Origin: Macrostomum lignano
Lineage: Eukaryota
Direction of reading: 5' to 3'
NCBI GenBank assembly: GCA_002269645.1
Contig: NIVC01000184.1
Span: 124,001 to 188,000, forward strand
Length of the DNA: 64,000 bases
This document shows positions 1-25,729 of the stretch, piece after piece (the first letter of the stretch is position 1; each line of letters begins with the position of its first letter). The notes beneath the pieces were generated by a model. That model made no database searches. It was not told the DNA's origin and saw only the letters and a list, made by a program, of their open reading frames with translations. The translations under genes and the position numbers were made by a program.

Positions 1-1122
<1,122 letters not shown>

Positions 1123-1136
1123 GAGGCACTAAGAAA

Positions 1137-1512
<376 letters not shown>

Positions 1513-1924: not shown

Positions 1925-2192
<268 letters not shown>

Positions 2193-2844: not shown

Positions 2845-3085
2845 ACAGGCAGTATGACAGACAGTATGACAGGCAGTATGACAGGCAATTCGACAGGAAA
2901 TATGAAACAATATGACAGAAAATATGACAGACAATATGACAGGCAATATGACAGACTATATGACAGACGACAGGTAATATCACAGAAAATATCACAGGCC
3001 ATTTGACAGGCAATAAATATGACAGACATTATGACAGACATTATGATAGACAATATGACCGACAATATGACAAACAGTGTGACAG
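2845..3085. repeat. Degenerate ~12-bp tandem repeat (ATATGACAGACA-like)
   Basis: Repeated ATGACAG core, grading into the 14-bp array. Confidence 0.8.
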
Positions 3086-3094
3086 ACTTCCTTC

Positions 3095-4466: not shown

Positions 4467-4480
4467 TCACCCCCCCGCAG

Positions 4481-4951
4481 CCGCAGCCAGGGCTTTATCG
4501 GACTGCCGCCACGAACCCTGCCAACACGGCGGTGTCTGCACCGCCGGCTCGCTGACGTGCGCCTGTCCGCAGGGCTTCGTCGGCGACCGCTGCGAGCTGC
4601 CCGATCCGTGCCAGCACAGCCCGTGCCATCCGGCCAGCGCATGCGTCGTGAACTCCACCAGCTGGGGCTTCCAGTGCCTCTGTCCGTCTGGTTTCGTAGG
4701 CGACACGTGCAGCATTGACGTCAACGAGTGCCTGTCGGCTCCGTGCGCCAACGGAGGCAGTTGCGTCAACACTGAGGGCGGGTACAGCTGTCGGTGCCCT
4801 GCCGGCTTCGAGGGTCGGCACTGCGAGCTGCCTTTGTCGCCGTCTCGACCTTCAACAGCGATCGACTGTCGGCTGAACGGCGGCTGCTACAACGGTGGCG
4901 TCTGCAGCGGCGATTTCGACGGCAAATGTCGCTGCGTTGACGGATTTTCAG
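4481..4951 (+). CDS. Notch-like exon: EGF repeats 1-4
   Basis: Acceptor ccccccgcag|, donor g|gtgaaa. EGF3 ECLSAPCANGGSCVNTEGGYSC carries the O-glucose (C-X-S-X-P-C) and O-fucose (C-X4-S-C) consensus. Confidence 0.92.
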
Positions 4952-6556
4952 GTGAAAGGAGAGGCGGACAACGGGGGATGGAGATGGAGATGAAAATAGA
5001 GTAGGAGGTAAAGACAGAATGGTAGACAGACAGATGGAATGACAGGCAGGCAGACAGATCCCAAATGAAAACCTGATCCCAAATGGAATTACAAAATTAC
5101 AAAAAATTAAAAGTGTAGAAAAGGCTAAGCGTTTTTATGTAAATCTATATTTCCATATAACAAAGGAATTTTCTATTGATATTTGTTTCTCCAACTTCCA
5201 TAATGTTCGTCTGAATTCTTTAACGAAGTCGCGTACACATTGATTTTATAGTTTCGTCCCATTTCTTTCTAACAATGTCACTCTGATTGGGGTCTGCCTC
5301 GAACCAGCGTGATTGAATTATTGAAGTTAACTGCTTGTTATTACTGGTTTCGGTGAATACTTTTGTAAAAATCGAACTCGAACTCCAACATATTCTTGCA
5401 GCGGTACTCTAAACTTCTCAACTCGAAGCTTCACAAACTCGAAGCTTCACAAACTCGAAGCTTCACAAACTCGAAGCTTCACTAACTCTAAACTTCACAA
5501 ACTCTAAACTTCTCAACTCGAAGCTTCACAAACTCGAAGCTTCACAAACTCGAAGCTTCACAAACTCGAAGCTTCACAAACTCGAAGCTTCACTAACTCT
5601 AAACTTCACAAACTCTAAACTTCACAAACTCTAAACTTCACAAACTCTAAACTTCACAAACTCGAAGCTTCACAAACTCTAAACTGCACAAACTCTAAAC
5701 TTCACACACTCTAAACTTCACAAACTCTAAATTGCACAAACTCGAAGCTTCACAAACTCTAAACTTCACACACTCTAAACTTCACAAACTCTAAACTGCA
5801 CAAACTCGAAGCTTCACAAACTCTAAACTTCACACACTCTAAACTTCACAAACTCTAAACTGCACAAACTCGAAGCTTCACAAACTCTAAACTTCACACA
5901 CTCTAAACTTCACAAACTCGAAGCTTCACAAACTCTAAACTTCACACACTCTAAACTTCACAAACTCTAAACTTCACACACTCTAAACTTCACAAACTCT
6001 AAACTTCACAAACTCTAAGCTTCACAAACTCTAAACTTCACAAACTCTAAACTTCACAAACTCTAAACTTCACAAACTCTAAACTTCACAAACTCGAAGC
6101 TTTACAAACTCGAAGCTTCACAAACTCGAAGCTTCACAAACTCTAAACTGCACAAACTCTAAACTGCACAAACTCGAAGCTTCCCAAACTCTAAACTTCA
6201 CACACTCTAAACTTCACAAACTCTAAACTTCACAAACACTTAACTTCACAAATTCGAAATTTCACAAATTCAAAATTTCACAAACTCTAAACTTCACACA
6301 CTGAAAATTTCATAAGCTCGAAGCTTCACGAACTTAAAACTTAGCATCACATTACTGAAATTTCGAACGCACAAAACACCCCCATTATATTTAAGCCGAA
6401 TCGAAATTTTACTGCTGACAAATTCAAGAATCACTGTCTGCCTGTCTGCCTTTTAACCAACAATCGCAGCTGATGCCAAGATTGACAACCCAATCTGCTG
6501 CGCTCTCGAGCTCTTCATCGATCCGCTCTTTGCCTCTCTGTCCCAGTCTGTGCCTC

Positions 6557-6587
<31 letters not shown>

Positions 6588-9500
6588 CCTTTTAGCTCGA
6601 TAACTAGGCTGATGTGCCTTTCTCCTCGATATGTGGTGTTAAATAATTAAGTGGCAACTGAGGGTTGGAGGCGGCAGGCAGTTCTGCAAATTTGTGTCTC
6701 TCCAGTCACGATTTCTGTTAAAAATGATGCCACAGAAATATGACACACAATATACATCCTGACATGCAGTCTCTTTCGAGTCCTATTCGAAGCCCAAATA
6801 TTTGGTCCGAGTGGCTAAAACTTTGAGGCAATATCTGAAATCCTTAGTCTAACGGCGCGTGTCTACGTTTTTCATGAAGTAATTATTTTAATTTGAAGAA
6901 AATAGCCTCCCGGACATTCGGGTTGGCTCAGGGACTTCCGAAACAAGCTGGCTTATTTCCCCTGCAGAAGACCTGGACCCCCGCCTCCAACTCTCCTCAG
7001 GCTGCAAGATTAAGCAAACTCGTACAAAGGCGCCAATACTGCACGCAGGCCCGCACTCATACACATGCTCACACAGCTAGGGTGTCAAAATGTCAAACAC
7101 GCGTTAACCCCCTGAGATGCTCTGCTCCTTAAGAAGAACCTGAAATAGTCCCATGAAGTTTGAGAAAGTCAGAGAGTTTCAGAGATTTAGAGTCAGAAGA
7201 GTTAGAGGCTCTGGGAGAGTCAGAGAGTGGTGGCAGAGAGTCAGGGTGTCAGATAGTCAGGGTGTCAGATAGTCAGGGTGTCAGAGAGTCAGGGCGTCAG
7301 AGAGTCAGGGCGTCAGAGAGTCAGGGCGTCAGAGAGTCAGGGCGTCAGAGAGTCAGGGCGTCAGAGAGTCAGGGCGTCAGAGAGTCAGGGTGTCAGAGAG
7401 TCAGGATGTCAGAGAGTCAGGGTGTCAGAGAGTCAGGGTATCAGAGAGTCAGGGTGTCAGAGAGTCAGGGTGTCAGAGAGTCAGGGTGTCAGAGAGTCAG
7501 AGTGTCAGAGAGTCAGGGTGTCAGAGAGTCAGACACAGAGACAGCCAGCACTTTGCAGTGACCCGAGCTCCAATCTGGCAACCATTTATCCGGTTTCCCC
7601 TCGCCTCGGAGGGGATAATTGACAGAGCGGGGACCAGCGCATCCGGAGGGGAAGGGCAGAAGGCCAGGGGCCGAACTGAGGAAGCTGCAAGCTGATGTTG
7701 GCCTTGTTCGGGAAAACATGCAAGAATTGATCCGACAAAAAAATATCAAAATCAAGCCATTTCAGCCCAGACCCCTAACCGGAATCCTCTCTGATCCCAA
7801 CAGATTTTTATCCCCTAAGAACAGGAAGAAAAAAGCGTTGCTGCTAATGGGGCTGATGGCTGGAATTAATAGAAACAGCATGCAAAAAAGTGACAACAAT
7901 ATGAAAAAGAAACTGTTTTTCTGCTGAACAGTTCCCCATTAGAGTTAAGCAGGAATGGGGAAAAAACTATAACTAGGGTACTATTTTGGGAAGAACCGAA
8001 TGCTCCCATCTCAGCGAAAAAGAGAGGATTTGAAACTCGATCCTACTCAAGCTCTGTCACTTTGCAAAGCTTTCGAGCCAAGCCTTCAACTGCAAATACC
8101 AATTCCTTTGGGAAATCTTTAATATGCAGTTGCCGATGTGGACCTCAAATTTAATGGCAATTCAGTGCCCAGACAGCGAAACACTCTCTTCTAGAACGTG
8201 CTGAAATTGAAAAAAGAACTGCTACAAGCTGACTAGAGAAAGCAAAAAAACATTTTAAGTCACAGCTGTTAGAGGACTGAGGACTCCCTCAAGCACTCTA
8301 GGGGACGTTAGTGAAATTAACTAATTTACAGCCAACCCCCTCACCACCACCCCACAGCCAACCTCCACACCCACCAACCCACAGCCAACCCCTTCACCCA
8401 TCACCCCACAGCCGACCCCCTCCACCCACCACCCCACAGCCAACCCCTCAGCCACCACCCCACAGCCAACCCCGTCACCCACCACCTACAGCCAACCCCG
8501 TCACCCACCACCTACAGCCAACCCCATCACCCACCACCCCACAGCCAACACCCTCACCCACCACCCCACAGCCAACCGCCTCACCCACAACCCCACAGCT
8601 GACCCCCTCACCCGCCACCCCACAGCCGACCCCGTCACCCACCACCCCACAGCCAACACCCTCACCCACCACCCCACAGCCAACCCCCTCACCCACAACC
8701 CCACAGCCGACCCCCTCACCCGCCACCCCACAGCCGACCCTCACCCACCACCCACCGCAAAACCATCACAAAATACTCACCCTCGCCAAATTCCTCTGCA
8801 GGCACCCGCTGCGAAGTCCCACCGCAGTCAGAATCGGTGTCAGATCCCTGCGCCTCGAACCAGCCGTGCCTTCACGGTGGCCTGTGCAGAAGCTTCGCCG
8901 CCACCGGCACATTCGTATGCGACTGCGCGTCCGGCTGGTTGGGCCTTCGCTGCGAGCAGCTGCTGAACCCGTGCACCGAATCATCGTGTCTTGGCCGAGG
9001 CCGCTGCTTGCCGACAGCAGCTGGCGGATTCAACTGCCGTTGTCATGCGGGATTTCGAGGCCGATACTGCGAGCATTTATCGCAGCCGACCGGCTTGCCG
9101 ACAGTCCAGCCGGAACCCTGCAATTCCAGCCGGTGGCAGTCCTGGTGTCTGAACGGCGGCCGCTGTTTCCAGTTGGTTGGCGTCGAACTTCCGGTGTGCC
9201 AGTGTCGACGCGGTTTCACCGGCAGTCGCTGCCAGATCGACGTGAACGAATGCGAGCAGTTCGGCGGCGCCTGTCTGAATGGAGGCGAGTGCGTTGACGA
9301 GCCTGGAGGGTTCAGGTGCACCTGCAAACCCGGCTTTCAGGTGAGTGGCTGAGTGAGGATTGGAGACAGGTGCATTACAGCACATGGAGACTTGAATTTC
9401 AGGAAAGATCTGCAACAATTAAAATTTATTTTCAGATACTACACGTCCTCCATGTATATTTTATACACACCATTTTTATTTGGCTAATTAATCTGTTTAA

Positions 9501-12500
9501 CTGGTAGAGCCTGAAAAATCCTCCTTAGGATTGATCTTCTAATAGCTCAAGAGTCCTCTTGCCCCTCTTTCTTACAAAATGGTCATTTTTCACTATCAGC
9601 CCCATCCCATCCTCCGCTACCCACCCCATCCTCCGCTACCCACCCCATCCTCCGCTACCCACCCCATCCTCCGCTACCCACCCCATCCTCCGCTACTCAC
9701 TCCATCCTCCGCTACCCACCCCACATCCTCCGCCAGCCACCGCATCCTCCGCTACCCACCCCATCCTCCGCTACCCACCCATCCTCCGCTACCCACCCAT
9801 CCTCTGTTACCCACTCCATCCTCCGCTACCCACCCCATCCTCCGCTACCCACCCCATCCTCCGCTACCCACCCCATCCTCCGCTACTCACTCCATCCTCC
9901 GCTACCCACCCCACATCCTCCGCCAGCCACCGCATCCTCCGCTACCCACCCCATCCTCCGCTACCCACCCCATCCTCCGCTACTCACTCCATCCTCCGCT
10001 ACCCACCCCACATCCTCCGCCAGCCACCGCATCCTCCGCTACCCACCCCATCCTCCGCTACCCACCCCATCCTCCGCTACCCACCCATCCTCTGTTACCC
10101 ACTCCATCCTCCGCTACCCACCTTATCTTCCGCTACCCACCCCATTCTCAGCTACCCACCCCGTCCTACCAAATACTACAAGCGTACCTGACATTCCAAT
10201 GCACTATTAGTCAGCTAATTCTTATTAGGTACAACTGCATCTATAGAAAGTCCATCCGTTTCCGGGAAATACGCTTCCCCAAGGATCTGAGAGCCAGAGC
10301 AAGCACAGTAAAGACGCACGGGCACAGGCCCATATCTTTTCTTTCTATAAAATGATTTAATAACTTTCCCATCCCCGAAGTTGAGTTGATGCTAATTCAA
10401 ACAAAAAATGTTCTGCTACGGAAAAACAGCACGAAGTCCATGGATAATGAGCAGGAGGTTTTTGTAGCATTATTGCGTGATATTTTTGCCAGAGTCTGCC
10501 TGACTTTCGGCTCTATCAAGTGTACTTTACTATTTTCACTGTTTTACTACTGATCAAATTTTATTATTCACCGCTGCTATTCACATTTTTCAAGTTCACT
10601 CTACCTCTTACACTCTTCACACTGCACTCGTAACTCTTCACTTCTCACCCGTCACTCTTCACTCCTCACCCGTCAAACTCTTCACTCCTCATCCGTCATT
10701 CTTCACTCCTCACCCGTCACTCTTCACTCCTCATCCGTCACTCTTCACTTCTCACCCGTCACTCTTCACTCCTCATCCGTCACTCTTCACTCCTCACCCG
10801 TCACTCTTCACTCCTCATCCGTCACTCTTCACTTCTCACCCGTCACTCTTCACTCCTCATCCGTCACTCTTCACTCCTCACCCGTCACTCTTCACTCCTC
10901 ATCCGTCACTCTTCACTCCTCACCCGTCACTCTTCACTCCTCATCCGTCACTCTTCACTTCTCACCCGTCACTCTTCACTCCTCATCCGTCACTCTTCAC
11001 TTCTCACCCGTCACTCTTCACTCCTCACCCGTCACTCTTCACTCCTCACCCGTCACTCTTCACTCCTCATCCGTCACTCTTCACTCCTCACCCGTCACTC
11101 TTCACTCCTCATCCGTCACTCTTCACTTCTTATCCGTCACTCTTTACTCCTCATCCGTCACTCTTCACTCCTCACCCGTCACTCTTCACTTCTCACCCGT
11201 CACTCTTCACTCCTCATCCGTCACTCTTCACTTCTCACCCGTCACTCTTCACTCCTCATCCGTCACTCTTCACTCCTCACCCGTCACTCTTCACTCCTCA
11301 TCCGTCACTCTTCACTTCTCACCCGTCACTCTTCACTCCTCACCCGTCACTCTTCACTCCTCATCCGTCACTCTTCACTCCTCATCCGTCACTCTTCACT
11401 CCTCACCCGTCACTCTTCACTCCTCATCCGTCACTCTTCACTTCTTATCCGTCACTCTTTACTCCTCATCCGTCACTCTTCACTCCTCACCCGTCACTCT
11501 TCACTTCTCACCCGTCACTCTTCACTCCTCATCCGTCACTCTTCACTTCTCACCCGTCACTCTTCACTCCTCACCCGTCACTCTTCACTCCTCACCCGTC
11601 ACTCTTCACTCCTCATCCGTCACTCTTCACTTCTCACCCGTCACTCTTCACTCCTCACCCGTCACTCTTCACTCCTCATCCGTCACTCTTCACTCCTCAT
11701 CCGTCACTCTTCACTCCTCACCCGTCACTCTTCACTCCTCATCCGTCACTCTTCACTTCTTATCCGTCACTCTTTACTCCTCATCCGTCACTCTTCACTC
11801 CTCACCCGTCACTCTTCACTTCTCACCCGTCACTCTTCACTCCTCATCCGTCACTCTTCACTTCTCACCCGTCACTCTTCACTCCTCATCCGTCACTCTT
11901 CACTTCTCACCCGTCACTCTTCACTCCTCATCCGTCACTCTTCACTCCTCACCCGTCACTCTTCACTCCTCATCCGTCACTCTTCACTTCTCATCCGTCA
12001 CTCTTCACTCCTCATCCGTCACTCTTCACTCCTCACCCGTCACTCTTCACTCCTCATCCGTCACTCTTCACTCCTCACCCGTCACTCTTCACTTCTCACC
12101 CGTCACTCTTCACTCCTCATCCGTCACTCTTCACTGCTACCCAGTCAACTGTCACACCTTTAATTTGCAGTCTTCACTCCTCACCGGACGTTGCTCTGTT
12201 TTCACTGTTTTCTGCTCATTCTATTCTCAAGGTTTGACACTTGTCACCCACCCTACATCAGATGTTCCCTAAGCCCTAATCCGATCTTTTTGCCGCCTCA
12301 TCATCCGCTTTAATCAGCCACCTTAGCAACCTATTTGACCTAAGCTACCTGCCTTTGTGAGATCAAAGTTCCAATTATTTTTAGGTTTTTAATAAAAGCA
12401 GATGTTTACTTAGATTGGAAGAAACAAGGTGACTAGACTAAATGAAGAGCAGACTCACTTTTGACCCTCTGGATACCCAGGTATCTTGTATCAATCCGAT

Positions 12501-15500
12501 TCTATTTCCGGATCGCAAAAGTTTTCTGCACCAATTCCAATAGCTAATTTATTTATTTTTAGTCAATGGGTTAATCATCTCCTTTGTTTCTCTTCATTTC
12601 TATCCTCTGTTCCCAGCTCACAATCGCAATCAATACGCCTTAACTCTGTCATTTATGCTTGCTCTTCCCTTCTATACTGTAGCTCGTACCAAAATTCTCT
12701 CTAATTGCCCAACACAGCAGTATACCCATCCCATCCTCCGCTACCCACCCCATCCTCCGCTACCCACCCCATCCTCCGCTACCCACCCCATCCTCCGCTA
12801 CCCACCTTATCCTCCGCTACCCACCCCATCCTCCGCTACCCACCCCATCCTCCGCTACCCACCCCATCCTCCGCTACCCACCCCATCCTCCGCTACCCAC
12901 CCCATCCTCCGCTACCCACCCCATCCTCCACTACCCACCCCATCCTCCGGAACAAACCCCATCCTTTGCTACCCATCCCATCCTCCGCTACCCACCCCAT
13001 CTTCCGCTACCCACCCCATCTTCCGCTACCCACCCCATCCTCCGCTACCCACCCCATCCTCCGGAACAAACCCCACCCTTTGCTACCCACCCCATCCTCC
13101 GCTACCCACCCCATCCTCCGCTACCCACCACATCTTCCGCTACCCACCCCATCCTCCGCTACCCACCCCATCCTCCGCTACCCACCCCATCTTCCGCTAC
13201 CCACCCCATCCTTTGCTACCCACCCCATCCTCCGCTACCCACCCCATCCTCCGCTACCCACCCCATCTTCCGCTACCCACCCCACATCCTCCGCTACCCA
13301 CCCCATCCTCCGCTACCCACCCCATCCTCCGCTACCCACCCCATCCTCCGCTACCCACCCCATCTACGGTTACCCACTTCAGCTTACCTAAACATGATCA
13401 AAACTCCTAAATTCAACACCTAAAAACTACGAGGGGCGTACTGAAAGTTTTGAGATACACCGAAACCACAAATGTTTGAAGCAAAATTTCTGTCACAATT
13501 TTTCGAAGTAGCTCGTATCTTTGTTTTCTAGTATTGAATATCATAAACGACCTTTCCTTGCAGGGCCCGTACTGTCAAGGTGACACGGGTGAATGCGCGA
13601 ACAGCCTCGGTCCGTGCAGCCCAGCGGGCACCCTTCGCTGCCTCCGCAGAGGTCCGTCCGACCGCCTGAGGAGCTTCACCTGCACCTGCAAGCCGGGCTT
13701 CTCCGGTCCGCTCTGCCATCGACGCGTCGACCCGTGCGACAGCGTCGTGTGTCTCGGCGGCGGTCGCTGCGTCTTCGACAGCTCGGCTGGTCCCGCCTGC
13801 CTCTGCCCGCCCGGTCGCGCCGGTCAGCACTGCCAGTTCATCGGCTCCACCTGCGACGAATCGCCGTGCCGCGGCGCCGCCTCAACCTGCCGGCAGGTTC
13901 GCCTTGGCGGCGGCTTTCGTTGCCACTGCCAGCCGGGTCTGTGCGGCCCCACCTGCGCGGAACGGTGCCCGACGTTCGCGGAGGCGCGCAACCGCTGTCG
14001 CGAGGCCGGCTGCGACGTCCTCGCAGGCGACGGTCGCTGTGACAGGCGCTGCAGCGGGCCGGCCTGCGACTGGGACGGGGGCGACTGCGGCGGCCTGGGC
14101 GCTCGGCCGTGGGTGAACTGCACCGCTATGAGGCTCGGCTTGGCCGCCTGCGACTCGGTGTACGCAGACGGCGAGTGCAACACAGTCTGCAACACCGAGG
14201 CCTGCCTGTTCGACGGCGGCGACTGTCGAGACGACCGGCTGTCGGCGAGAGCGAAGCCCGACTCTGACCCGTGTCCCTATCGCTACTGCGCCGATCACTT
14301 CGCCGACGGCAGCTGCGACCGAGGCTGCGACAGTCCCGCCTGTCTGTTGGACGGCGGTGACTGCGCTGAGCCGGCGGCCGCTCCGCCGTCCCAGTCGCCG
14401 GCGGCAGCAGCAGCGCCGCAGTCGTCTTCAAAGACATCCGCCGACGCGACTGCTTCGATGTGGCGCGAATCCCAACTCGACAAAACTGCTGCTAGCGAGC
14501 TGCTGGAACTGGAGGTGGCGGCGTCTCCAGCCGAAGCGTCCGAGGCCATCCGTTCGCTGACGCGAAGTCTGTCCCGCAACCTGGGCACGCTGCTGCGACT
14601 TGTCCAGCCTCCGGTGGCCGCCACCGTCCCCGGCTCGGCTGACGCATCGCTGGTCAGATTCCAGCTGGACGCTTGCTTGGACGCCAAGACTTTTTCCAGC
14701 TCGTCAGCCGCTGACGCCAACCAAGACGCGTCGCTGACCGATTTCTGCTATCGAAGCGCAAACTTCGCAGCCCAGGCGGTGGCGGCCGGGGTCATGTCCA
14801 GCCGCCTGCTGCTGCCCCTGCGGCTGCGTCGGGTTACTTCGGTTGGCAGCGGTGACAGCCAGTTGTCTGCGGCGGGTAGCGGTGGAGGCCGCAACAGGAG
14901 CGGCGGCGGGGGCGGCGGCGGCGGGGGCGGCGGCGTGATCGGAGTGAGTCGCTCTGGCGGAGTCGGCAGCTTCCTGCTGCCAGCTGCAGTGGCAGCCGCC
15001 TGCCTCCTGGTGCTGGGCCTGCTGCTCGGTTTCCTTCTCAGCGCCATGCGCCGAGGCGGCGTCGTGGCCGAGACGGACGGCAACAATGAAGTAGGAAGAT
15101 TCCGTGGGTGTCGTCGGCAGGCGCGAGTCACGGCGCCGCTAAGCCTGACCGCCTCGCCTGTGGCGGGGACTGGCACGGTGGATTCAGCCTCGATGGCTCC
15201 ACCGCCAGCTGCCAGCCTGAGCGGCTCTCCGCTGCCGCTGCACCGGCTGCAGCCGCCGCATCATTACCAGTCACCGGCGCAGCTTCCAGTTCCTAGGATG
15301 GCCTACCGAGCTCAGAGACTCGCTTTGGGTCAGGTGAGTGACTTCCGATTTTGGATTCTGAAATGCATTATGATTAGCTATTAGTATATGGATTTATGTA
15401 AAGTATATTAACATTTATTATATATAACTAACTCAATAATACTTTTTCCTACAATTAATTATACTTATAACCAACGCTGACTCTTACAAGCGACTACCGA

Positions 15501-17606
15501 CAGAAGGTTTCATCTGCCTAGTTTAGGTTCGATCCAACACCATCAGACCCTATTCAACACTATCAGACCTTATCCAACACCATCAGAGCCTATCCAACAC
15601 CATCAGACCCTATCCAACACCATCAGACCTTATCCAACACCATAAGACCCTATTCAACACCATCAGACCCTATCCAACACCAACAGACCCTATCCAACAC
15701 CATCAGACCCTATCCAACACCATCAGACCCTATCCAACACCATTAGACCCTATCCAACACCAACAGACCCTATCCAACACCATCAGATCCTATCCAACAC
15801 CATCAGACCCTATCCAGCACCATCAGACCCTATCCAGCACCATCAGACCCTATCCAGCACCATCAGACCCTATCCAACACCATTAGACCCTATCCAACAC
15901 CATCAGACCTATTTAACACCATCAGACCCTATCCAACACCATCAGACCCTATCCAACACCATCAGACCTATTTAACACCATCAGACCCTATCCAACTATC
16001 CAACTATCCTATCCAAAATCATTAGATCAGTCTAAAAACCTCCGAACTACTCGTAATGAGAAAAAAAGAGAATTTTTGCTTTCCGATCTGCTTTCGCAAT
16101 AACCAGCCTAGCCTTTTACTAGCTCGTACCCAACAAGACTCGGTGCAAAGAGACGCTCTGCAGAGTATCCATTGCTCACGCTAATCTAGTTAGCAACTAA
16201 AAGAAGCAAAACATGCACAAGATAGCAAGCAGTCTGGTGTAGACACAAGATTGAGTCTGACAGGCCCAAAAGCAGCTTTGGCGGCACCGATGACAACAGC
16301 CGTATTAGATGCCAGGATGCCCCATCACTTTTAACGCCTGTCCCATTATCTCGCCAACTCATCTACATCGCTGATTTCGATCAGCTCCAAGCATCGCCAA
16401 GCATCAAACAGTTTTTCTTCTTTCTACAAAAACCATCAAATTTGTCCAGACGGCCTCGTCGCCAGGCAGCTTGAGTCTGCATCCGGCAACTGACTCGGAC
16501 TTCTCTGAGTTGCCAATGTCTGCAGCAACAACAACAACTGCTGCTACTGCTGCTGCTACGTGTTCAGCAGCTTCGGGACCGGCAACTGCAGGACCGTCAG
16601 AACCGTCCCCCAGCGGGCTGGCAGCAGAGCGGAGCCGTGACGACTGTTGGTGGAAGCCAAGAAAGAGAAGTACGCTTCTGACACTTGTACGCTTGTACAA
16701 TGACGCTCGACCATCGTGTAAATTTTGCTGCAAATGCATTGGCAAGACATATATGATGTTTTCAGCTTTTTAGCGCTGGATTTTAGCACCTCCTAGCCTT
16801 CCAAATAATATATATCAATACATATTTGCAACCGGGTTGTTAGCACTACATCTTCCCACAATCAGTACTGACGGCAATTATGCCCATTCCGGTGACCCCT
16901 GAGTACATACATAATCGCTCCCATACTGTACGCAGGCTTGCACTCGTACACACGATCACACAGGGTGTACAGCGTGTACACACGCTCACCCTTTGACTTT
17001 TTAATCACCAATTATTGAACAGTTTTGTTTTACTAAGCTAGCGGTCACGAGAAAATTCCATCTGGAAAGAAGCCTCCTAATAGAAAGGAACAAAGAACTG
17101 AATGAGCTGGGAACTGGGAACTTTCTATCTCGAAATGAATTCTTCAGTGAAAATTGTCCAGCAACAAAACTTGCTCGTCTTCTGCTTTAGTTGATAAGAG
17201 CAACAGGTAGGTATGCGTGTTGCGTAAGTGTCAGGAGCATGGTTGATATTTTTAACGATAGCCCTAATTACTGATTCTTTTAGTTATTGACGCTACTGAA
17301 AATAATAATTACGTTTTCTTCAGCAGTTTCTTTTAAAAATAAAATACACATGCCGTCTTACTACTAGTTTAAATAGTAGAATAATAAACATTTATCTGTA
17401 GAATTTTGATTTTTATAAACGACTACACAAAAATTATCTTTCTAGATCGTCAGCGATGGTTCAACAGTCTTGAGCATCGGCGTTCGATCAGCCTCATCCA
17501 GCAGCATCTCCAGCAGCAGCAGCAGCAGCAATTGCATCTTCAACAACAGCAGCAGTTTTGGCAATGGAAGCAGAATCTGGGCTCGCTGACTGGAAGTGCA
17601 GTGTGA
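4481..17606 (+). CDS. Notch-like transmembrane receptor, 5'-partial: 11 EGF repeats, 3 LNR repeats, HD-like region, TM, low-complexity cytoplasmic tail without visible ankyrin repeats
   Basis: Predicted join 4481-4951, 8802-9340, 13564-15333, 16450-16669, 17446-17606. All introns GT-AG with consistent phases (1,0,0,1). Split EGFs rejoin correctly (DGFSG|TRCE; KPGFQ|GPYCQ). Calcium-binding EGFs (IDVNEC...), three LNR motifs ending DGGDC, TM FLLPAAVAAACLLVLGLLLGFLLSAM followed by RR. First three exons high confidence, last two moderate. Confidence 0.85.
5407..6335. repeat. 16-bp minisatellite (AAACTCTAAACTTCAC / AAACTCGAAGCTTCAC)n in Notch-like intron
   Basis: Period 16 with two interspersed variants. 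Confidence 0.95.
7210..7532. repeat. 16-bp minisatellite (TCAGAGAGTCAGGGYG)n
   Basis: Period 16. Confidence 0.95.
8329..8757. repeat. 27-bp C-rich minisatellite (CACAGCCAACCCCCTCACCCACCACCC)n
   Basis: Period 27; source of the PTPSPTTPQ pseudo-ORF; ends ~45 nt before an acceptor. Confidence 0.93.
8802..9340 (+). CDS. Notch-like exon: EGF repeats 5-8
   Basis: Acceptor ttcctctgcag|, donor cag|gtgagt; EGF cysteine spacing. Confidence 0.93.
9598..10165. repeat. 19-bp minisatellite (ACCCACCCCATCCTCCGCT)n, array 1
   Basis: Period 19. Confidence 0.95.
10625..12135. repeat. 21-bp minisatellite (CACTCCTCACCCGTCACTCTT)n with a 315-bp higher-order period
   Basis: Period 21; a rare variant recurs at 11130, 11445 and 11760. 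Confidence 0.96.
12723..13362. repeat. 19-bp minisatellite, array 2 (same unit as 9598-10165)
   Basis: Same consensus unit. Confidence 0.95.
13564..15333 (+). CDS. Notch-like exon: EGF 9-11, LNR x3, HD-like region, TM, juxtamembrane tail
   Basis: Acceptor tttccttgcag|, donor cag|gtgagt; LNRs at ~13990-14365; TM 14971-15048. Confidence 0.95.
15533..15993. repeat. 20-bp minisatellite (ACCATCAGACCCTATCCAAC)n
   Basis: Period 20. Confidence 0.95.
16450..16669 (+). CDS. Probable Notch-like cytoplasmic exon (Ser/Thr/Ala-rich, ends DDCWWKPRKR)
   Basis: Acceptor tttgtccag|, phase 0 matches the previous donor; candidate donor a|gtacgc. Confidence 0.6.
17446..17606 (+). CDS. Probable terminal Notch-like exon with poly-Gln tract
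   Basis: Acceptor atctttctag|; phase 1 matches the 16669 donor; GC-rich coding-like island in AT-rich DNA. The phase-0 alternative is also short (poly-Ser, ends IWAR*). Confidence 0.5.
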
Positions 17607-18267: not shown

Positions 18268-20627
18268 CAAACCCAGTTTCCACTGACCGAGAAGGAACTG
18301 CTAGACAAACCCAGTTTCCACTGACCGAGCAGGAACTACTAGACAAACCCAGTTTCCACTGACCGAGCAGGAACTGCTAGACAAACCCAGTTTCCACTGA
18401 CCGAGCAGGAACTGCTAGACAAACCCAGTTTCCACTGACCGAGCAGGAACTATTAGACAAACCCAGTTTCCACTGACCGAGAAGGAACTGTTAGACAAAC
18501 CCAGTTTCCACTGACCGAGCAGGAACTGTTAGACAAACCCAGTTTCCACTGACCGAGCAGGAACTGCTAGACAAACCCAGTTTCCACTGACCGAGCAGGA
18601 ACTGTTAGACAAACCCAGTTTCCACTGACCGAGCAGGAACTATTAGACAAACCCAGTTTCCACTGACCGAGCAGGAACTGTTAGACAAACCCAGTTTCCA
18701 CTGACCGAGCAGGAACTGTTAGACAAACCCAGTTTCCACTGACCGAGCAGGAACTGTTAGACAAACCCAGTTTCCACTGACCGAGCAGGAACTGTTAGAC
18801 AAACCCAGTTTCCACTGACCGAGAAGGAACTGCTAGACAAACCCAGTTTCCACTGACCGAGCAGGAACTGTTAGACAAACCCAGTTTCCACTGACCGAGA
18901 AGGAACTGTTAGACAAACCCAGTTTCCACTGACCGAGCAGGAACTGTTAGACAAACCCAGTTTCCACTGACCGAGCAGGAACTGTTAGACAAACCCAGTT
19001 TCCACTGACCGAGCAGGAACTGCTAGACAAACCCAGTTTCCACTGACCGAGCAGGAACTGTTAGACAAACCCAGTTTCCACTGACCGAGCAGGAACTGCT
19101 AGACAAACCCAGTTTCCACTGACGAGCAGGAACTGCTAGACAAACCCAGTTTCCACTGACCGAGCAGGAACTGCTAGACAAACCCAGTTTCCACTGACCG
19201 AGCAGGAACTATTAGACAAACCCAGTTTCCACTGACCGAGCAGGAACTATTAGACAAACCCAGTTTCCACTGACCGAGAAGGAACTGCTAGACAAACCCA
19301 GTTTCCACTGACCGAGCAGGAACTGTTAGACAAACCCAGTTTCCACTGACCGAGAAGGAACTGCTAGACAAACCCAGTTTCCACTGACCGAGCAGGAACT
19401 GTTAGACAAACCCAGTTTCCACTGACCGAGCAGGAACTATTAGACAAACCCAGTTTCCACTGACCGAGCAGGAACTGTTAGACAAACCCAGTTTCCACTG
19501 ACCGAGCAGGAACTGCTAGACAAACCCAGTTTCCACTGACCGAGCAGGAACTGTTAGACAAACCCAGTTTCCACTGACCGAGCAGGAACTGTTAGACAAA
19601 CCCAGTTTCCACTGACCGAGAAGGAACTGCTAGACAAACCCAGTTTCCACTGACCGAGCAGGAACTGTTAGACAAACCCAGTTTTCACTGACCGAGAAGG
19701 AACTGTTAGACAAACCCAGTTTCCACTGACCGAGCAGGAACTGTTAGACAAACCCAGTTTCCACTGACCGAGCAGGAACTGTTAGACAAACCCAGTTTCC
19801 ACTGACCGAGCAGGAACTGCTAGACAAACCCAGTTTCCACTGACCGAGCAGGAACTGCTAGACAAACCCAGTTTCCACTGACCGAGCAGGAACTGTTAGA
19901 CAAACCCAGTTTCCACTGACCGAGCAGGAACTGTTAGACAAACCCAGTTTCCACTGACCGAGCAGGAACTGTTAGACAAACCCAGTTTCCACTGACCGAG
20001 CAGGAACTGTTAGACAAACCCAGTTTCCACTGACCGAGAAGGAACTGCTAGACAAACCCAGTTTCCACTGACCGAGCAGGAACTGTTAGACAAACCCAGT
20101 TTCCACTGACCGAGCAGGAACTATTAGACAAACCCAGTTTCCACTGACCGAGCAGGAACTGCTAGACAAACCCAGTTTCCACTGACCGAGCAGGAACTGT
20201 TAGACAAACCCAGTTTCCACTGACCGAGCAGGAACTGTTAGACAAACCCAGTTTCCACTGACCGAGCAGGAACTGCTAGACAAACCCAGTTTCCACTGAC
20301 CGAGCAGGAACTGTTAGACAAACCCAGTTTCCACTGACCGAGCAGGAACTGTTAGACAAACCCAGTTTCCACTGACCGAGCAGGAACTGTTAGACAAACC
20401 CAGTTTCCACTGACCGAGCAGGAACTGCTAGACAAACCCAGTTTCCACTGACCGAGCAGGAACTGTTAGACAAACCCAGTTTCCACTGACCGAGCAGGAA
20501 CTGTTAGACAAACCCAGTTTCCACTGACCGAGCAGGAACTGTTAGACAAACCCAGTTTCCACTGACCGAGCAGGAACTGCTAGACAAACCCAGTTTCCAC
20601 TGACCGAGCAGGAACTATTAGACAAAG
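18268..20627. repeat. 38-bp satellite (AAACCCAGTTTCCACTGACCGAGCAGGAACTGTTAGAC)n, ~62 units
   Basis: Head-to-tail units with no spacers; variation largely confined to a few positions. Confidence 0.97.
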
Positions 20628-22034
20628 CCAGCCATTTTTTCTCATTCAATAATAATCTATTACGTTTTCCGCACGAATCGGGTGGTGGAGATGCGAGTTG
20701 AGAGGCGCAAACCGGACGTATATAGGCAGCTAACTGCCGACTCTCCCACCATGCAGCGTCAAGCCCTGCTCAAAAGCATTGTTTCATACACAGCTAGGCT
20801 GCCTAATGCAGTCCCGCACTGCCGGTGAAAAACCATTATCGCATGAATACGAGCTACATCAGCAAATTTAGCTTGAAAAAGTTGATAGCGATTCACTGAA
20901 GCTTTTTGAATTTAAAACGGAATCTCTGTTTTTGCATGGTGACGCTTCCTGTCGAGGCTTAAAAAATTATACTATAAATTTCTGAACTGACTTACTCTTT
21001 GTATCGGCCAAAAAATCTGCTTTTTTTCTTATTCTGTAAGCACAATAAAGTAATGCATAAGTGTAATATTCTCGTAGTGCACTTGTTTTATCCACTAGTT
21101 TCAGAACGGAAATAAATTTTGGATCTATTGTCTGGGTTTTCTACCAATGACAATAGATTCAGTAATTATCCACAGAAAAGCTATGTAATATCACGTGCCT
21201 ATAATCTAAATCCGATGCACTTTCTACAATAATTCCTGAGTAAAGTAGTTTAACTGTCTGTTTTACAGAAAGTCCTTATTCGATATGCTTTTCATGTCAC
21301 ATGTTGCCTCTATTCGAAATTGTGGTGGCGTGTGAAATGTGTCTGGGTTGTTGGTGCTGGGTTGATTTGTGTGTTTCATAGGGGTTGCGCTGCTCTGGCG
21401 TTATTTTGTCTTCTCTCTGTACTGCTCTGGCGTTTTAGTCCCTTTCTACGAGTACAATAAATAGTTGTCGAATATATAAGTCGAGTATACCAGCCCAACT
21501 CTGCATCGCGTGGCGCAATAGCGTCACTCAAAAGTCAATACTGGGCCTAGAATTTACTCCGCACTCTCAAAGCTGGTGACTTTTTAATTTTGCTGAGTAT
21601 ATTTAAAATCTGAAAAGTAGGATACTGAGAATCTTGCGCATGCCTTATCCATGCTTTTCTGTCAGGCAAAATTCAAGAAGAAGACTCTCCCTGGAATCTA
21701 CTTGGTTCATTCACTATTCGGAAGTCCGAAAGTTTGGACTTCCGTTACCGTCAAAAATTAAAATTACGATCTTTTTTCTGCAAAAAACCGGCCGCATATT
21801 TCGAAATCTATAAGCTTGAGTAGCATCTTTTGATTTTGCTAATTACAGGATTGTACTTCACGAGAAAAAACTTTATTCAGTGCAAAACAATGAATGAAAA
21901 ATAGGCACGCCTAAGTTCTTCATATTGTTCTATTGAATATCCAAACTCTGTTGAAAATTCATTCTTTGCAACAGGATATTGAGGAGGCCATCAACACATA
22001 GGGGATGCTTATTTTTCATTTTCACTGTCTCTTT

Positions 22035-24230
22035 TTACCACAGACGGCACTCATCGGAGGCGACCTCGGGCTGGGAAGTCGGACAGCCGAACGCTCTGAA
22101 GAAGTCGTCATCGCCGGAGATGAGGCTCCGTATGCGCAGTCTGCCTGGCGTGTGGCTCCACGTCTCGCTGCCAGTCTCCATGAAGTGATGCAGGAACTCT
22201 TGGCTACTCTTCGAGCAAAAAGTCCGCAGGCTGGCAATGTAGAGCAGCTGCTGCGGTGAGTAGCGCTCCATGAATCCTGGCAGTTGTTGGTCGATGCCCG
22301 ACTCAGCTAGAAGTTCGATAGTCACCGACAGACCGATCCTGTCTGCGAAGTCCTCCTTAACGTTGGTCTTGTTGAAGCCCAGTCGGAGAAGCAGACTTTG
22401 TCTAAGGCAAGCGTGCTTCTCCTGGAGTCGGGCACCAAATGAGGCGTTTAATATCCCATCGTCATGTTGATTGAATGAACCAAATACAGCGTGCGTGAGC
22501 TCGTGAGCGAGCACCAGCGCTTGAGTACCGACACTGACTGCCGCTGGCTGGTCTGACAGATAATGCGGATATTCTAAGAAAGCTGGCGTCAGAATCACTG
22601 CCTTCTGATATGCGTTATAATGCGGCGATTCCTGGTCAAAAGTTTCCTCCATCGTTCGAAAGATCAGGTAATTTTGAAGAGCCAACGCTCGGACTAGAAA
22701 GCAAGCCGGGCTAACTAATATTGTGCATCCTCTGGGTGGCATCGAGTCAAACGCTTCGCCAAAATGCTGCACCAGAGCAGTCTCGCTGACTTGCTCTGTG
22801 AAAAAATTCAACTTAGTTTGCTGCAGTCGTCGCTTCAACACGGCCTTGTCGGGCTCAGGAATCCAAGTCTGCAACTCCAATGCCGACGCGTAGACCGTCT
22901 TGATTCGGTGGAAAATATCAAAGATTTCAGCTTCAACTGCGAGACGCTCCTCTTTTAACATCCTGGCGTAGCGACCGTGCAGCAGGGGGCGAAATGCTCC
23001 TTCAAAGTTGACAGTCGAACTCGATGACTCGCTTCTTACTTTTCCGAATAGAACGTCCAAACATTTGGCATTTTTTGGAGTTGAAAAGATTGCAGCGCCC
23101 AGCACGCAGATTTGGTTGAGTATGATCAGTTTAGGCAGCTCTGTGAATCGCCTACCGCATTTTTCTAGAACGCAAACGGTACGCAGAAAAGATTTCGTAT
23201 CTGGCAGCACCAGCGGTGTCAAATCATCAGCAGGCGGATGTCCCGACAACTGAAGGTTCAGCCGCAGAAACTCGTCGAACCCGAAGGTTAAGTTGGCTCG
23301 CCGAAGCAGCCGCTTAGCATCGCCCACCGTCTGTACAGGTAATTCGTCTGCAACAACCCTTTCTGCGGTTCGGTTGCAGGGATCATTCCACAGAAGCAGG
23401 TCGGATTGAGCACGTCGTATAAGGCCAAACAGACTGCCGCCGCGTGATCTAAGCTGCAGCAATCGCATCATTCTGTAGGCCTGAAACGGCAGATTTCTCA
23501 ACAACGGCCCGACAACCTTGAGACCATGAAAATTATCGTTAGACGTCAGCAAAATTGCCGGTCTGCCAGCTGCGTTCGCAACGCCTGGTATAACAATCAT
23601 CGGGCTGATGAAGCTCTTTGCTGACTGTGTCGGCATCAGCTGTTCGAGTCTCAGCTGTTGCCGCATATTCAATCCTTTAATCGCGCGATCTGCAATTTCG
23701 TCCAGAATCTCGGCTCCGTTAGCCATCAGCATTCCATGGAAGCTCCAGTCTTCAAGGGTTGTTTCCAGCAAGGCGCACTCTCGGAAAGCTTTCACAGCCA
23801 GCTGCTCATAGGCTTGAAGCCTTGTCGAGTTTGGCTGCCCGGCCTGACCGGACCCTGTGCAGTTGGCGTCCCAGCAACCCGTCACTAGCTGCTCGGTCAC
23901 CCGCTCGCTGTACGCGGATCCGGTCCGCTGAATGTAGTCTAGATTGACGAATATCCTCTGCACCAGGCTCTGGCCCGTGAACTGCTGTTTAGAGCGGAAT
24001 CCGCCGCACAGGAATTCTTCAAAGTCCTGACACGGATCAGACGAAGTGTTCAACGTGCTTTGCAGTTCCATCGACATTTTCCAACAGTTTAGCGTTCGAC
24101 AAACTCTTGTTCCATTCGTAGCAGTTTCGTTGGCAGCTCCAAATGGTGGGAGCAAAGACATCAATGAAGCGGTCAAGAACACAATGTTGCCTACCAGTGG
24201 CTTCAATGATGTCAGTCGAAGCTCTGCCAT
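22035..24230 (-). CDS. M13-family zinc metallopeptidase (neprilysin/ECE-like), intronless, 731 aa
   Basis: N-terminal hydrophobic segment; CLNCW and DPCQDFEEFLCGG matching the NEP N-terminal Cys motif; HELTH (HExxH); EDFADRIG (cf. ENIADNGG); HTPGRLR (cf. HSP..R); terminal C...W. TATA-like sequence at ~24306-24317 and AATAAA at 21872-21877 on the - strand. Confidence 0.92.
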   Translation of the reverse strand: MAELRLTSLKPLVGNIVFLTASLMSLLPPFGAANETATNGTRVCRTLNCWKMSMELQSTLNTSSDPCQDFEEFLCGGFRSKQQFTGQSLVQRIFVNLDYIQRTGSAYSERVTEQLVTGCWDANCTGSGQAGQPNSTRLQAYEQLAVKAFRECALLETTLEDWSFHGMLMANGAEILDEIADRAIKGLNMRQQLRLEQLMPTQSAKSFISPMIVIPGVANAAGRPAILLTSNDNFHGLKVVGPLLRNLPFQAYRMMRLLQLRSRGGSLFGLIRRAQSDLLLWNDPCNRTAERVVADELPVQTVGDAKRLLRRANLTFGFDEFLRLNLQLSGHPPADDLTPLVLPDTKSFLRTVCVLEKCGRRFTELPKLIILNQICVLGAAIFSTPKNAKCLDVLFGKVRSESSSSTVNFEGAFRPLLHGRYARMLKEERLAVEAEIFDIFHRIKTVYASALELQTWIPEPDKAVLKRRLQQTKLNFFTEQVSETALVQHFGEAFDSMPPRGCTILVSPACFLVRALALQNYLIFRTMEETFDQESPHYNAYQKAVILTPAFLEYPHYLSDQPAAVSVGTQALVLAHELTHAVFGSFNQHDDGILNASFGARLQEKHACLRQSLLLRLGFNKTNVKEDFADRIGLSVTIELLAESGIDQQLPGFMERYSPQQLLYIASLRTFCSKSSQEFLHHFMETGSETWSHTPGRLRIRSLISGDDDFFRAFGCPTSQPEVASDECRLW

Positions 24231-25331: not shown

Positions 25332-25729
25332 TTAATCGAACGGAGACAGGCACTCGCAGAGGGCGCCTCGCAGGTCCGGATCGTTCTCCCAGAAGTCAGA
25401 TATCTTGCTGGTTTTATACTTGCCGAGAGTATTCTCCCTATCCAAATAGTTGCTTGGCTCCTTCTCTGCCCAGTAACTGGCGTTGAACGTAATGTTGCAA
25501 GCGACCCAGTACCAGCCATCGGCAGCATGCGCACTTCCAGGTGCTTGAAAGCCTCCAACAAAGAAGTAGCCAATGCTGTAATTGTTGTAGATGAAGTCCA
25601 AATGCTGCAGCTCAGTAGTGCTCGTCATGTCAGCCATGATCGTCAGGCTCCCATCGGAGTCGCACTTGTCTTTGCCCTGCTGCCATGACATTGATGCTGT
25701 ACTCGAAACGTAGTTTAGTTTGTACTTCA
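25332..25729 (-). CDS. C-type lectin domain exon (lectin 1); upstream coding portion not identified
   Basis: CTLD motifs FFVGG, GWYWV, WAEKEPSN, LCEC; preceded by a 67-nt GT-AG intron (25796-25730); no signal/PAN exon found. Confidence 0.75.

What the first reader, a model, noticed from the sequence alone, without database searches (positions are those of the whole stretch)
13564..17606. Notch receptor with an intact EGF-LNR-HD-TM ectodomain but apparently no ankyrin domain
Seen: at least 11 EGFs, three LNRs, an HD-like region and a TM, then a ~220-aa low-complexity tail over two further phase-compatible exons ending in poly-Gln and a stop at 17606. I saw no ANK-like exon on the + strand anywhere downstream in the window. 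Established: canonical Notch needs RAM plus ankyrin repeats to form the CSL-Mastermind complex. Inference: this could be a ligand sink or dominant-negative receptor, or one that is still ADAM/gamma-secretase-activated but releases a non-canonical intracellular fragment.
Basis: partly seen in the sequence, partly recalled or inferred. Interest (0 to 1): 0.75.

Follow-up and report, generated by a model that had tools for sequence, protein, structure and literature searches.

The report
Flatworm Notch copy without signalling tail
The flatworm Macrostomum lignano carries, beside a normal Notch gene, a diverged Notch copy that keeps the ligand-binding and regulatory outer part and the membrane anchor but has lost the two inner elements (RAM and ankyrin repeats) needed for classical Notch signalling, so it most likely soaks up ligand rather than signals.

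Summary
The window is Macrostomum lignano contig NIVC01000184.1. Its + strand carries a Notch-family gene with 11 EGF repeats over three exons, three LNR modules, a diverged but recognisable HD domain and one TM helix.

No ankyrin repeat occurs anywhere in the 64 kb on either strand. The same search finds the ANK exons of the species' canonical Notch 6-8 kb past its TM exon. At the RAM position the essential tryptophan is gone (VTAP instead of LWCP/WFPE).

An assembly break is excluded. Two further contigs show the same order in full (Notch-like exon, tail region, 38-bp minisatellite, convergent M13 peptidase gene), and a third shows it from the tail region onward.

Among the copies the ectodomain, NRR and TM are under purifying selection (pN/pS 0.15, p = 6e-6). 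The intracellular stretch is not detectably constrained (0.97, only 7 changes).

The HD-TM-tail has no relative outside M. lignano among 1.84 billion representative proteins.

The 3' tail is unresolved. I could reach no transcript data.

Best reading: a lineage-specific Notch paralogue that cannot signal through CSL and acts as a membrane-tethered ligand sink or cis-modulator. Function and expression are untested.

The parts
4498..4951 (+). EGF exon: EGF1-3 and the first part of EGF4. The acceptor upstream of 4498 is not resolved. Donor CAG|GTGAAAG at 4951|4952, phase 1.
   Evidence: Pfam EGF 2.2e-17 and EGF_CA 5.1e-10. tblastn of P0002. Junction read. PDB phmmer best matches are Notch1 EGF8-12/11-13 and DLL1 EGFs.
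8802..9340 (+). EGF exon: rest of EGF4, EGF5-7, first half of EGF8. Donor CAG|GTGAGT at 9340|9341, phase 0.
   Evidence: Pfam EGF 1.6e-23 and EGF_CA 7.6e-9. 100% identical to P0001 residues 1-179. Junctions.
13564..13965 (+). Start of the large exon: second half of EGF8, then EGF9-11.
   Evidence: Acceptor TTTCCTTGCAG|GG. Cys pattern in the translation. Pfam EGF. The intron position GFQ|GP is shared with the canonical paralogue.
13966..14364 (+). Three LNR modules (LNR-A to LNR-C).
   Evidence: Pfam PF00066 1.1e-22, 3 stretches. PDB Notch3/1/2 NRR at E 1.8e-25 to 2e-17. All LNR cysteines and Asp ligands are invariant in alignment A1.
14497..14844 (+). Diverged heterodimerisation (HD) domain, preceded by an Ala/Ser/Pro-rich insert at 14365-14496.
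   Evidence: Collinear alignment with canonical HDs, including the two conserved Cys and the CY-SA-FAAQ helix. NODP sub-threshold. AF2 strand-helix-strand-strand-helix-strand with pLDDT 83-90. Foldseek top 14 hits are all Notch NRR structures over 213-306 columns, E down to 3.6e-12.
14845..14970 (+). Gly/Ser-rich linker between HD and TM, with a (GGC)n run at 14902-14934. It varies in length between copies.
   Evidence: Translation. In-frame 3-nt indel in L005. Differs in P0001-3.
14971..15048 (+). Transmembrane helix FLLPAAVAAACLLVLGLLLGFLLSAM, followed by the stop-transfer residues RR.
   Evidence: Kyte-Doolittle maximum 2.75 over 19 residues. Aligns with canonical Notch TMs.
15049..15333 (+). 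Intracellular stretch encoded by the large exon (95 aa), with no recognisable domain. Position 15109-15138 (CRRQARVTAP) aligns with the RAM basic stretch plus WxP motif, but the Trp is replaced. Donor CAG|GTGAGT at 15333|15334, phase 0.
   Evidence: Alignment. Pfam finds nothing. pN/pS 0.97 among copies. Donor read.
16510..16681 (+). Candidate tail exon, a GC island open in all three + frames. P0002-type model: 16526-16681 (acceptor TCTGCAG|, ending in stop TGA at 16679-16681).
   Evidence: P0002 and P0003 map here in different frames. Codon scoring and copy comparison do not decide between the models.
17446..17606 (+). Unverified.
   Evidence: Acceptor TTTCTAG| at 17445 and phase compatibility. 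CAGCAG in-frame insertion in L005/L006 and one Q>E change. AATAAA at 17338, 17383 and 17924.
18268..20631 (.). 38-bp minisatellite, 62 copies, between the Notch-like gene and the next gene.
   Evidence: TRF. Present in all four loci.
22035..24230 (-). Convergent single-exon M13 peptidase gene. It bounds the space available for further + strand exons.
   Evidence: ORF. Annotated in GCA_002269645.1 with Pfam Peptidase_M13. Four copies, Mlig013943g1-4.

Best explanation
Shown: this is a Macrostomum-lineage paralogue of Notch. It arose by duplication of a canonical Notch gene. It kept 11 EGF repeats, the three LNRs, the HD domain and the TM helix. It has no ankyrin domain and no RAM tryptophan.

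Follows from established knowledge of the pathway: RAM and ANK are what bind CSL and recruit Mastermind, so any fragment released from this protein cannot assemble the canonical transcription complex.

Inferred mechanism: the protein sits in the membrane and binds Delta/Serrate-type ligands through its Notch-type EGFs, in trans or in cis. It thereby titrates ligand away from the canonical receptor, acting as a natural equivalent of engineered intracellular-domain-deleted dominant-negative Notch. The intact NRR may still gate ectodomain shedding, which would limit the lifetime of the sink. The intracellular tail would act only as a spacer or sorting tail.
For: Identity and origin:
- The window is 100% identical to M. 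lignano NIVC01000184.1.
- The NRR is closest to the M. lignano canonical Notch, 42% identity against at most 34% to other animals.
- It shares the CQPGLCGPTC...CPT lead-in and the GFQ|GP intron position with that gene.

Domains: Pfam and PDB hits; AF2 and Foldseek to Notch NRR structures.

Loss of the signalling part:
- No ANK in 64 kb by three searches, with a positive control.
- RAM position VTAP, against LWCP/WFPE in canonical proteins.
- No Pfam domain in either tail model.
- A convergent gene at 22035-24230.

Not an artefact: two further contigs with the full layout and a third from the tail region onward; ORF intact in the window and in L005.

The ectodomain is the selected part: pN/pS is 0.15 for EGF-NRR-TM (p = 6e-6) and 0.97 for the intracellular stretch.
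Against: - No expression evidence. The NCBI annotation of three contigs calls no gene here, although that annotation is sparse. No transcript-derived protein was found, but none was found for the canonical Notch either.
- The 5' end and signal peptide were not found in the window.
- Ligand binding is assumed from generic Notch-type EGFs, and no one-to-one match to EGF11-12 could be made.
- The intracellular pN/pS rests on 7 changes. The contrast with the ectodomain gives Fisher p = 0.078.
- Copy L004 has three single-base deletions, all in homopolymer runs and so possibly assembly errors.
Confidence: 0.5

Rival explanations
1. Non-canonical signalling receptor. Ligand pull opens the NRR, a metalloprotease and gamma-secretase cut as in Notch, and the released low-complexity, Gln-rich fragment acts in the nucleus or cytoplasm without CSL.
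For: - The NRR fold and the TM are kept under purifying selection, which a pure sink would need less.
- The tail GC islands and their splice sites are conserved in all copies.
Against: - The tail model is unverified, and an alternative model lacks the basic cluster.
- There is no Pfam domain and no homologue for the tail.
- The exon-4 intracellular stretch evolves at pN/pS 0.97.
- A linker of about 45 residues separates the HD from the TM, longer than in canonical Notch.
Confidence: 0.15
2. A silent or decaying duplicate: a Notch copy that lost its 3' half and is on its way to becoming a pseudogene, with no function.
For: - Not called as a gene in the NCBI annotation on three contigs.
- No transcript-derived protein in the databases.
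- L004 carries three frameshifting deletions.
- No orthologue of the HD-TM-tail outside M. lignano.
Against: - The 590-codon exon is open in the window and in L005. Chance stop frequency at this composition would give ORFs of roughly 30 codons (my own estimate).
- All EGF and LNR cysteines are kept at 41-42% identity to the canonical paralogue.
- pN/pS is 0.15, p = 6e-6.
- The L004 deletions sit in homopolymer runs typical of long-read assembly errors.
- The annotation also misses other ORFs in the window and truncates the canonical Notch.
Confidence: 0.25
3. Annotation or assembly artefact: the ankyrin exons exist, but further away, beyond the window, or on a misjoined contig.
For: - Gene models of the canonical M. 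lignano Notch also stop before the ANK exons, which lie 6-8 kb downstream. Truncated models alone therefore prove nothing.
- The genome is repeat-rich.
Against: - 48.7 kb downstream and 13.5 kb upstream hold no ANK on either strand.
- The window lies 124 kb and 521 kb from the ends of a 709-kb contig.
- Further contigs show the same order up to the convergent M13 gene.
- Most other coding features found downstream are on the minus strand; the exception is a reverse-transcriptase fragment on + at 30275-30901.
- The RAM motif, which lies inside the sequenced exon, is already lost.
Confidence: 0.05

Closest known systems
Canonical Notch receptors (LIN-12/Notch family); nearest is the M. lignano gene at NIVC01002279.1 (BOX15_Mlig029643g1; UniRef models A0A1I8FU46 and A0A1I8HGX7)
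   Same: - EGF repeats including Ca-binding ones, three LNRs, an HD domain and a single TM in the same order.
- 41-42% identity.
- Shared intron position GFQ|GP and a shared lead-in to LNR-A.
- The predicted fold matches solved Notch1/2/3 NRR structures.
- An EGF number (11) in the range of C. elegans LIN-12/GLP-1 (my own knowledge).
   Different: - No RAM tryptophan and no ankyrin repeats. The canonical paralogue has LWCPPGF and two ANK exons.
- No NLS/PEST that can be assigned.
- The two NRR introns of the canonical gene are absent.
- A long Ala/Ser/Pro insert lies before the HD, and a Gly-rich linker before the TM.
Engineered dominant-negative Notch lacking the intracellular domain, and soluble 'Notch decoys' (my own knowledge: Drosophila and Xenopus deletion constructs of the early 1990s; later Notch1-EGF-Fc decoys)
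   Same: An ectodomain able to bind ligand without a CSL-binding intracellular part. This is the mechanism I propose.
   Different: Those are laboratory constructs. This is a genomic paralogue under purifying selection. It keeps the NRR and TM, whereas soluble decoys do not.
Human NOTCH2NL genes (my own knowledge)
   Same: A lineage-specific partial Notch paralogue that lacks the signalling intracellular domain and modulates the pathway.
   Different: - NOTCH2NL keeps only the first six EGFs, has no LNR, HD or TM, and is a recent segmental duplicate nearly identical to NOTCH2.
- Here the loss is at the 3' end only, the copy is old (41-42% identity), and it is membrane-anchored.
Steinernema carpocapsae L596_001325 (TMS33603.1, P0017), an uncharacterised predicted protein
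   Same: Signal peptide, EGFs, LNRs, HD-like region, TM and a short tail without ANK. ANK-less LNR-TM gene models therefore exist in other invertebrates.
   Different: - Only 25% identical over the aligned NRR.
- Two EGFs and a duplicated LNR/HD-like unit.
- A gene prediction only, with no evidence of relation beyond the shared domains.

Membership tests
Notch receptor (LIN-12/Notch) | Tandem EGF repeats, including Ca-binding EGFs, in the ectodomain | tested here: met
   Pfam EGF 1.6e-23 and 2.2e-17; EGF_CA 7.6e-9 and 5.1e-10. 11 six-Cys units read in the translation. PDB best hits are Notch1 EGF fragments.
Notch receptor (LIN-12/Notch) | EGF pair equivalent to the ligand-binding EGF11-12, with an O-fucose site | tested here: inconclusive
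   EGF3 (DVNECLSAPCANGGSC...) fits the Ca-binding, C-x-S-x-P-C and C2-x4-S-C3 consensus by eye. However, phmmer aligns it equally well to several Notch1 EGFs. Ligand binding was not tested.
Notch receptor (LIN-12/Notch) | Three LNR modules directly after the EGFs | tested here: met
   PF00066 80.5 bits against a 21.2-bit cut-off, 3 stretches. Notch3 NRR at E 1.8e-25. Cys and Asp columns invariant.
Notch receptor (LIN-12/Notch) | Heterodimerisation domain (NOD/NODP) forming the NRR with the LNRs | tested here: inconclusive
   - Pfam NODP 19.7 bits, below the 25-bit cut-off; no NOD hit.
- HMMER finds no HD match outside M. lignano.
- In its favour: collinear alignment with the conserved Cys pair and helix; AF2 HD segment at pLDDT 83-90; Foldseek top 14 are all Notch NRR, E 3.6e-12, 213-306 columns.
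- TM-score is only 0.33-0.51 and the whole model has pLDDT 65.
Notch receptor (LIN-12/Notch) | Single-pass TM helix following the NRR | tested here: met
   26 hydrophobic residues at 14971-15048, followed by RR.
Notch receptor (LIN-12/Notch) | RAM region with the hydrophobic-Trp-hydrophobic-Pro motif about 10-20 residues after the TM | tested here: not met
   The aligned position reads RRQARVTAPLSL. The M. lignano canonical Notch has RREAGRLWCPPGF, and other animals have RKRAxGITWFPEGF. There is no Trp anywhere in the exon-4 intracellular stretch.
Notch receptor (LIN-12/Notch) | Seven ankyrin repeats in the intracellular domain | tested here: not met
   No ANK in the 64 kb on either strand, and none in either tail model. 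Positive control in L002 at E 2e-22.
Notch receptor (LIN-12/Notch) | Ligand-dependent S2/S3 cleavage and CSL/Mastermind-dependent transcription | not testable with these tools
   Needs cell-based assays.
Processed or decaying pseudogene | Disrupted reading frame or neutral substitution pattern | tested here: not met
   ORF intact in the window and in L005. pN/pS 0.15 for EGF-NRR-TM, p = 6e-6. Only L004 has single-base deletions, all in homopolymers.

The most novel reading that the evidence does not exclude
A naturally evolved 're-wired' Notch. The force-gated NRR and gamma-secretase switch are retained, but the released fragment is a lineage-specific basic and poly-Gln tail that acts without CSL. 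It would be a natural counterpart of synthetic Notch receptors, in a regenerating flatworm where RNAi and transgenesis are available.
Probability: 0.12. Interest if true: 0.8.

Novelty: new variant of a known kind. Interest (0 to 1): 0.5.

Why it matters
Comparative work stresses that the LNR region and the intracellular domain are the most conserved parts of Notch across animals, while the EGF array varies (bioRxiv 10.1101/2025.09.30.679519). Here the opposite has happened in one paralogue. The ectodomain, NRR and TM are kept under selection, and RAM and ANK are gone.

If the gene is expressed, it would be an endogenous membrane-tethered Notch antagonist, or a receptor with a new output. [quoted passage not shown]

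It is also a practical warning. Public M. lignano Notch models, both canonical and this one, are truncated or frameshifted. One of them, for this ANK-less gene, is named 'Notch receptor 3'. Domain-based pathway inventories for this species will therefore be wrong unless the loci are re-annotated.

Tried and rejected
1. Transcript evidence. Homology searches with the large exon and with the NRR profile returned no RNA-derived protein for this gene. Exact look-up of P0002 found no contig. The absence is uninformative, because the canonical M. lignano Notch also has only genome-derived entries.

2. Orthologues. An exhaustive HMMER search of 1.84 billion representatives found only the M. lignano protein beyond the LNRs. 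No cross-species test of the tail was therefore possible.

3. Choosing between tail models. None of these discriminated:
- Codon-usage log-odds and GC3.
- Substitutions and indels among four copies.
- Poly(A) signals.

4. Degenerate ANK remnants, searched with M. lignano's own ANK exons and its TM-RAM exon: nothing better than E 0.6.

5. Signal peptide or 5' exon within 1-4500: nothing convincing. The 2660-2725 'exon' of model P0002 is doubtful.

6. Literature. Five full-text searches and several papers gave no description of an ANK-less Notch paralogue in flatworms. This is absence in the held library only.

7. Assigning window EGF3 to Notch EGF12: PDB alignments are ambiguous.

8. Pfam on all + strand frames downstream was not run as one job because of size. 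It was replaced by local phmmer/hmmsearch with a positive control.

Full report
**Source of the window**

The large exon translation has three near-identical UniRef proteins of Macrostomum lignano (88-94% identity). A neighbouring gene placed the window exactly. It is 100% identical over 22,196 bases to contig NIVC01000184.1 of assembly GCA_002269645.1. Window position 1 corresponds to contig position 124,001 of 709,172, so no contig end is near.

**What is in the sequence**

On the + strand there are three clear coding exons with strong splice sites:
- ~4498-4951, donor CAG|GTGAAAG.
- 8802-9340, acceptor CTCTGCAG|, donor CAG|GTGAGT.
- 13564-15333, acceptor TTTCCTTGCAG|, donor CAG|GTGAGT.

Together they encode 11 six-cysteine EGF units, several of them Ca-binding by Pfam.

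The large exon continues without an intron through the following elements:
- Three LNR modules (Pfam 1.1e-22; Notch3/1/2 NRR structures at E 1.8e-25 to 2e-17).
- An Ala/Ser/Pro-rich insert.
- A diverged HD domain.
- A Gly-rich linker.
- A 26-residue TM helix.
- 95 intracellular residues.

**Is the HD real?**

Pfam sees only a sub-threshold NODP match. HMMER against 1.84 billion representatives finds no HD match outside M. lignano.

A MAFFT alignment with canonical NRRs is nevertheless collinear. It aligns the first strand and helix (LLELEV...AIRSLTRSLSRNLGTLLRL), the Cys-containing strand (VRFQLDAC), the helix CYRSANFAAQAVAAG and the last strand (LLLPLRLRRV).

An AlphaFold2 model of 13942-14952 has only moderate overall confidence (pLDDT 65), but 83-90 over the HD elements. 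Its 14 best Foldseek matches in the PDB are all Notch1/2/3 NRR structures. They cover 213-306 columns with E down to 3.6e-12, although TM-scores are low.

I take the NRR as present but diverged.

**Absence of RAM and ANK**

- A canonical Notch ANK domain (from P0008) finds nothing in the six-frame translation of the window: best E 3.2.
- A profile of seven Notch ANK domains: best E 8.9.
- M. lignano's own ANK exons: best E 0.6.
- Neither tail model has any Pfam domain.

The control is decisive. At the locus of the species' canonical Notch (L002, NIVC01002279.1) the same query finds two ANK exons at E 2e-22 and 1e-13. They lie 6-8 kb downstream of a TM exon that carries the RAM motif LWCPPGF. 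All public gene models of that gene miss them.

In the window gene, the residues aligned to RAM read RRQARVTAPLSL. The basic stretch and the proline remain, but the tryptophan that contacts CSL is gone. This looks like a decayed RAM rather than a protein that never had one.

**Origin**

The NRR is 42% identical to the M. lignano canonical Notch and at most 34% identical to Notch from other animals. Both flatworm genes share the unusual CQPGLCGPTC..CPT lead-in to LNR-A, a short HD loop, and an intron at the same place and phase (GFQ|GP). The window gene lacks the two introns that split the canonical NRR.

This points to a duplication within the Macrostomum lineage, followed by loss of the intracellular signalling part.

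**Artefact?**

The convergent single-exon M13 peptidase gene at 22035-24230 has three further copies in the assembly. Fetching their flanks gave three more loci.

Two of them (L004, L005) contain the Notch-like large exon, the tail region, the 38-bp minisatellite and the M13 gene in the same order. The third (L006) reaches the contig end inside the tail region. None has ANK.

**Selection**

The large exon is intact in the window and in L005. L004 has three single-base deletions, each in a homopolymer run.

Counting unique substitutions among the copies:
- The EGF-NRR-TM part has 7 non-synonymous and 17 synonymous changes. pN/pS is 0.15, and the binomial p against neutrality is 6e-6.
- The intracellular 99 codons have 5 and 2, giving pN/pS 0.97.
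- The contrast between the two parts gives Fisher p = 0.078.

The numbers are small, and some differences could be assembly errors. The direction is clear, though: the outside of the protein is being maintained, and the inside is not detectably constrained.

**The tail**

After the donor at 15333 there are two GC islands.
They give a 204-aa intracellular region with a basic cluster KPRKRNRQR across the junction and a poly-Gln end.
- UniRef model P0002 instead uses the stronger-looking acceptor TCTGCAG| at 16525 and stops at 16679-16681.
- Model P0003 reads the third frame.

Codon bias, substitutions among copies and poly(A) signals do not decide. The stop at 17606 is therefore a hypothesis.

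**Expression**

Expression is unknown. The NCBI annotation calls no gene over this region on three contigs. That annotation is sparse and also truncates the canonical Notch. No transcript-derived protein for either Notch gene of this species is in the searched collections.

**Interpretation**

- Shown: a Notch paralogue with a constrained EGF-LNR-HD-TM part and without RAM Trp or ANK.
- From established pathway knowledge: without RAM and ANK it cannot form the CSL-Mastermind complex.
- Inferred: it binds the same ligands and acts as a membrane-tethered sink or cis-modulator. The selection pattern favours this over a signalling role for the tail.

Rivals are a re-wired receptor releasing a non-CSL fragment (0.15), a silent decaying copy (0.25) and hidden ANK exons (0.05).

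**Comparison with what is known**

It works like the engineered intracellular-deletion dominant-negative Notch constructs. In evolutionary logic it resembles human NOTCH2NL, but it keeps the NRR and TM and is an old paralogue (both comparisons are from my own knowledge).

It fails two defining features of the Notch receptor family, RAM and ANK. I therefore file it as a Notch-derived variant, not as a Notch receptor.

A predicted ANK-less EGF-LNR-HD-TM protein also exists in the nematode Steinernema carpocapsae. Such models are thus not unique to this species, but none is characterised. The papers I could search describe no such flatworm gene.

**Verdict**

This is a new variant of a known kind, of moderate interest. 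Its value depends on transcript evidence, which can be obtained quickly from existing M. lignano RNA data.

Noticed in passing
L002 (NIVC01002279.1) 21164-21738, 27390-27992, 29703-30419: The canonical M. lignano Notch is annotated truncated. This applies to BOX15_Mlig029643g1 and to UniRef models A0A1I8FU46, A0A1I8FEK3, A0A1I8HGX7 and A0A1I8HF91. Its TM/RAM exon (LWCPPGF) and two ANK exons lie downstream of every model's end.
   Followed up: partly
window 9340|13564 and L002 15045|18924: The intron position and phase (KPGFQ|GP.C) are shared by the two paralogues. The window gene has no introns inside the NRR, where the canonical gene has two. This is intron loss in one gene or gain in the other.
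   Followed up: partly
window 1-1122, 1139-1516, 1925-2207, 3093-4465, 5406-6342, 7229-7532, 8328-8753, 9601-10167, 10611-12147, 12723-13364, 15532-15996, 18268-20631: Every intron and flank of the gene is filled with micro- and minisatellite arrays (periods 4 to 38, up to 280 copies). Several give long spurious ORFs in all frames.
   Followed up: yes
window 22035-24230 (-): A single-exon M13 (neprilysin-type) peptidase gene, convergent with the Notch-like gene. It is present in four copies in the assembly (Mlig013943g1-4). This gives a handle on the ploidy and duplication structure of the region.
   Followed up: partly
window 25335-25748, 28746-29516, 32653-32940, 36047-36880, 61198-61980 (all -): A family of single-exon Cys-rich ORFs with a weak PAN-domain hit and a lectin-like C-terminal half. 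The block at about 26.8-29.5 kb is duplicated at about 34.4-36.9 kb (92.6% identity over 2.7 kb).
   Followed up: no
window 30275-30901 (+): A reverse-transcriptase (RVT_1, E 1.1e-19) fragment of a retroelement lies between the duplicated blocks.
   Followed up: no
window 40256-46449 (-): An importin-11-like gene (IBN_N and TPR_IPO11 hits) whose introns carry coding-looking minisatellites.
   Followed up: no
window about 14821-14832: The sequence RLRR, a furin-type R-x-R-R, sits at the start of the last HD strand, where the S2 site lies in canonical Notch. No furin-type site is seen in the HD loop where S1 normally lies.
   Followed up: no
P0017 (Steinernema carpocapsae L596_001325): A nematode gene model with a signal peptide, 2 EGFs, LNRs, two HD-like units, a TM and a short tail without ANK. 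It is another possible ANK-less Notch-like protein.
   Followed up: partly
L004 (NIVC01004037.1), window-equivalent 13587, 14235, 14923: One copy of the Notch-like exon has three single-base deletions in homopolymer runs. They are either long-read assembly errors or a real inactivation of one copy.
   Followed up: partly
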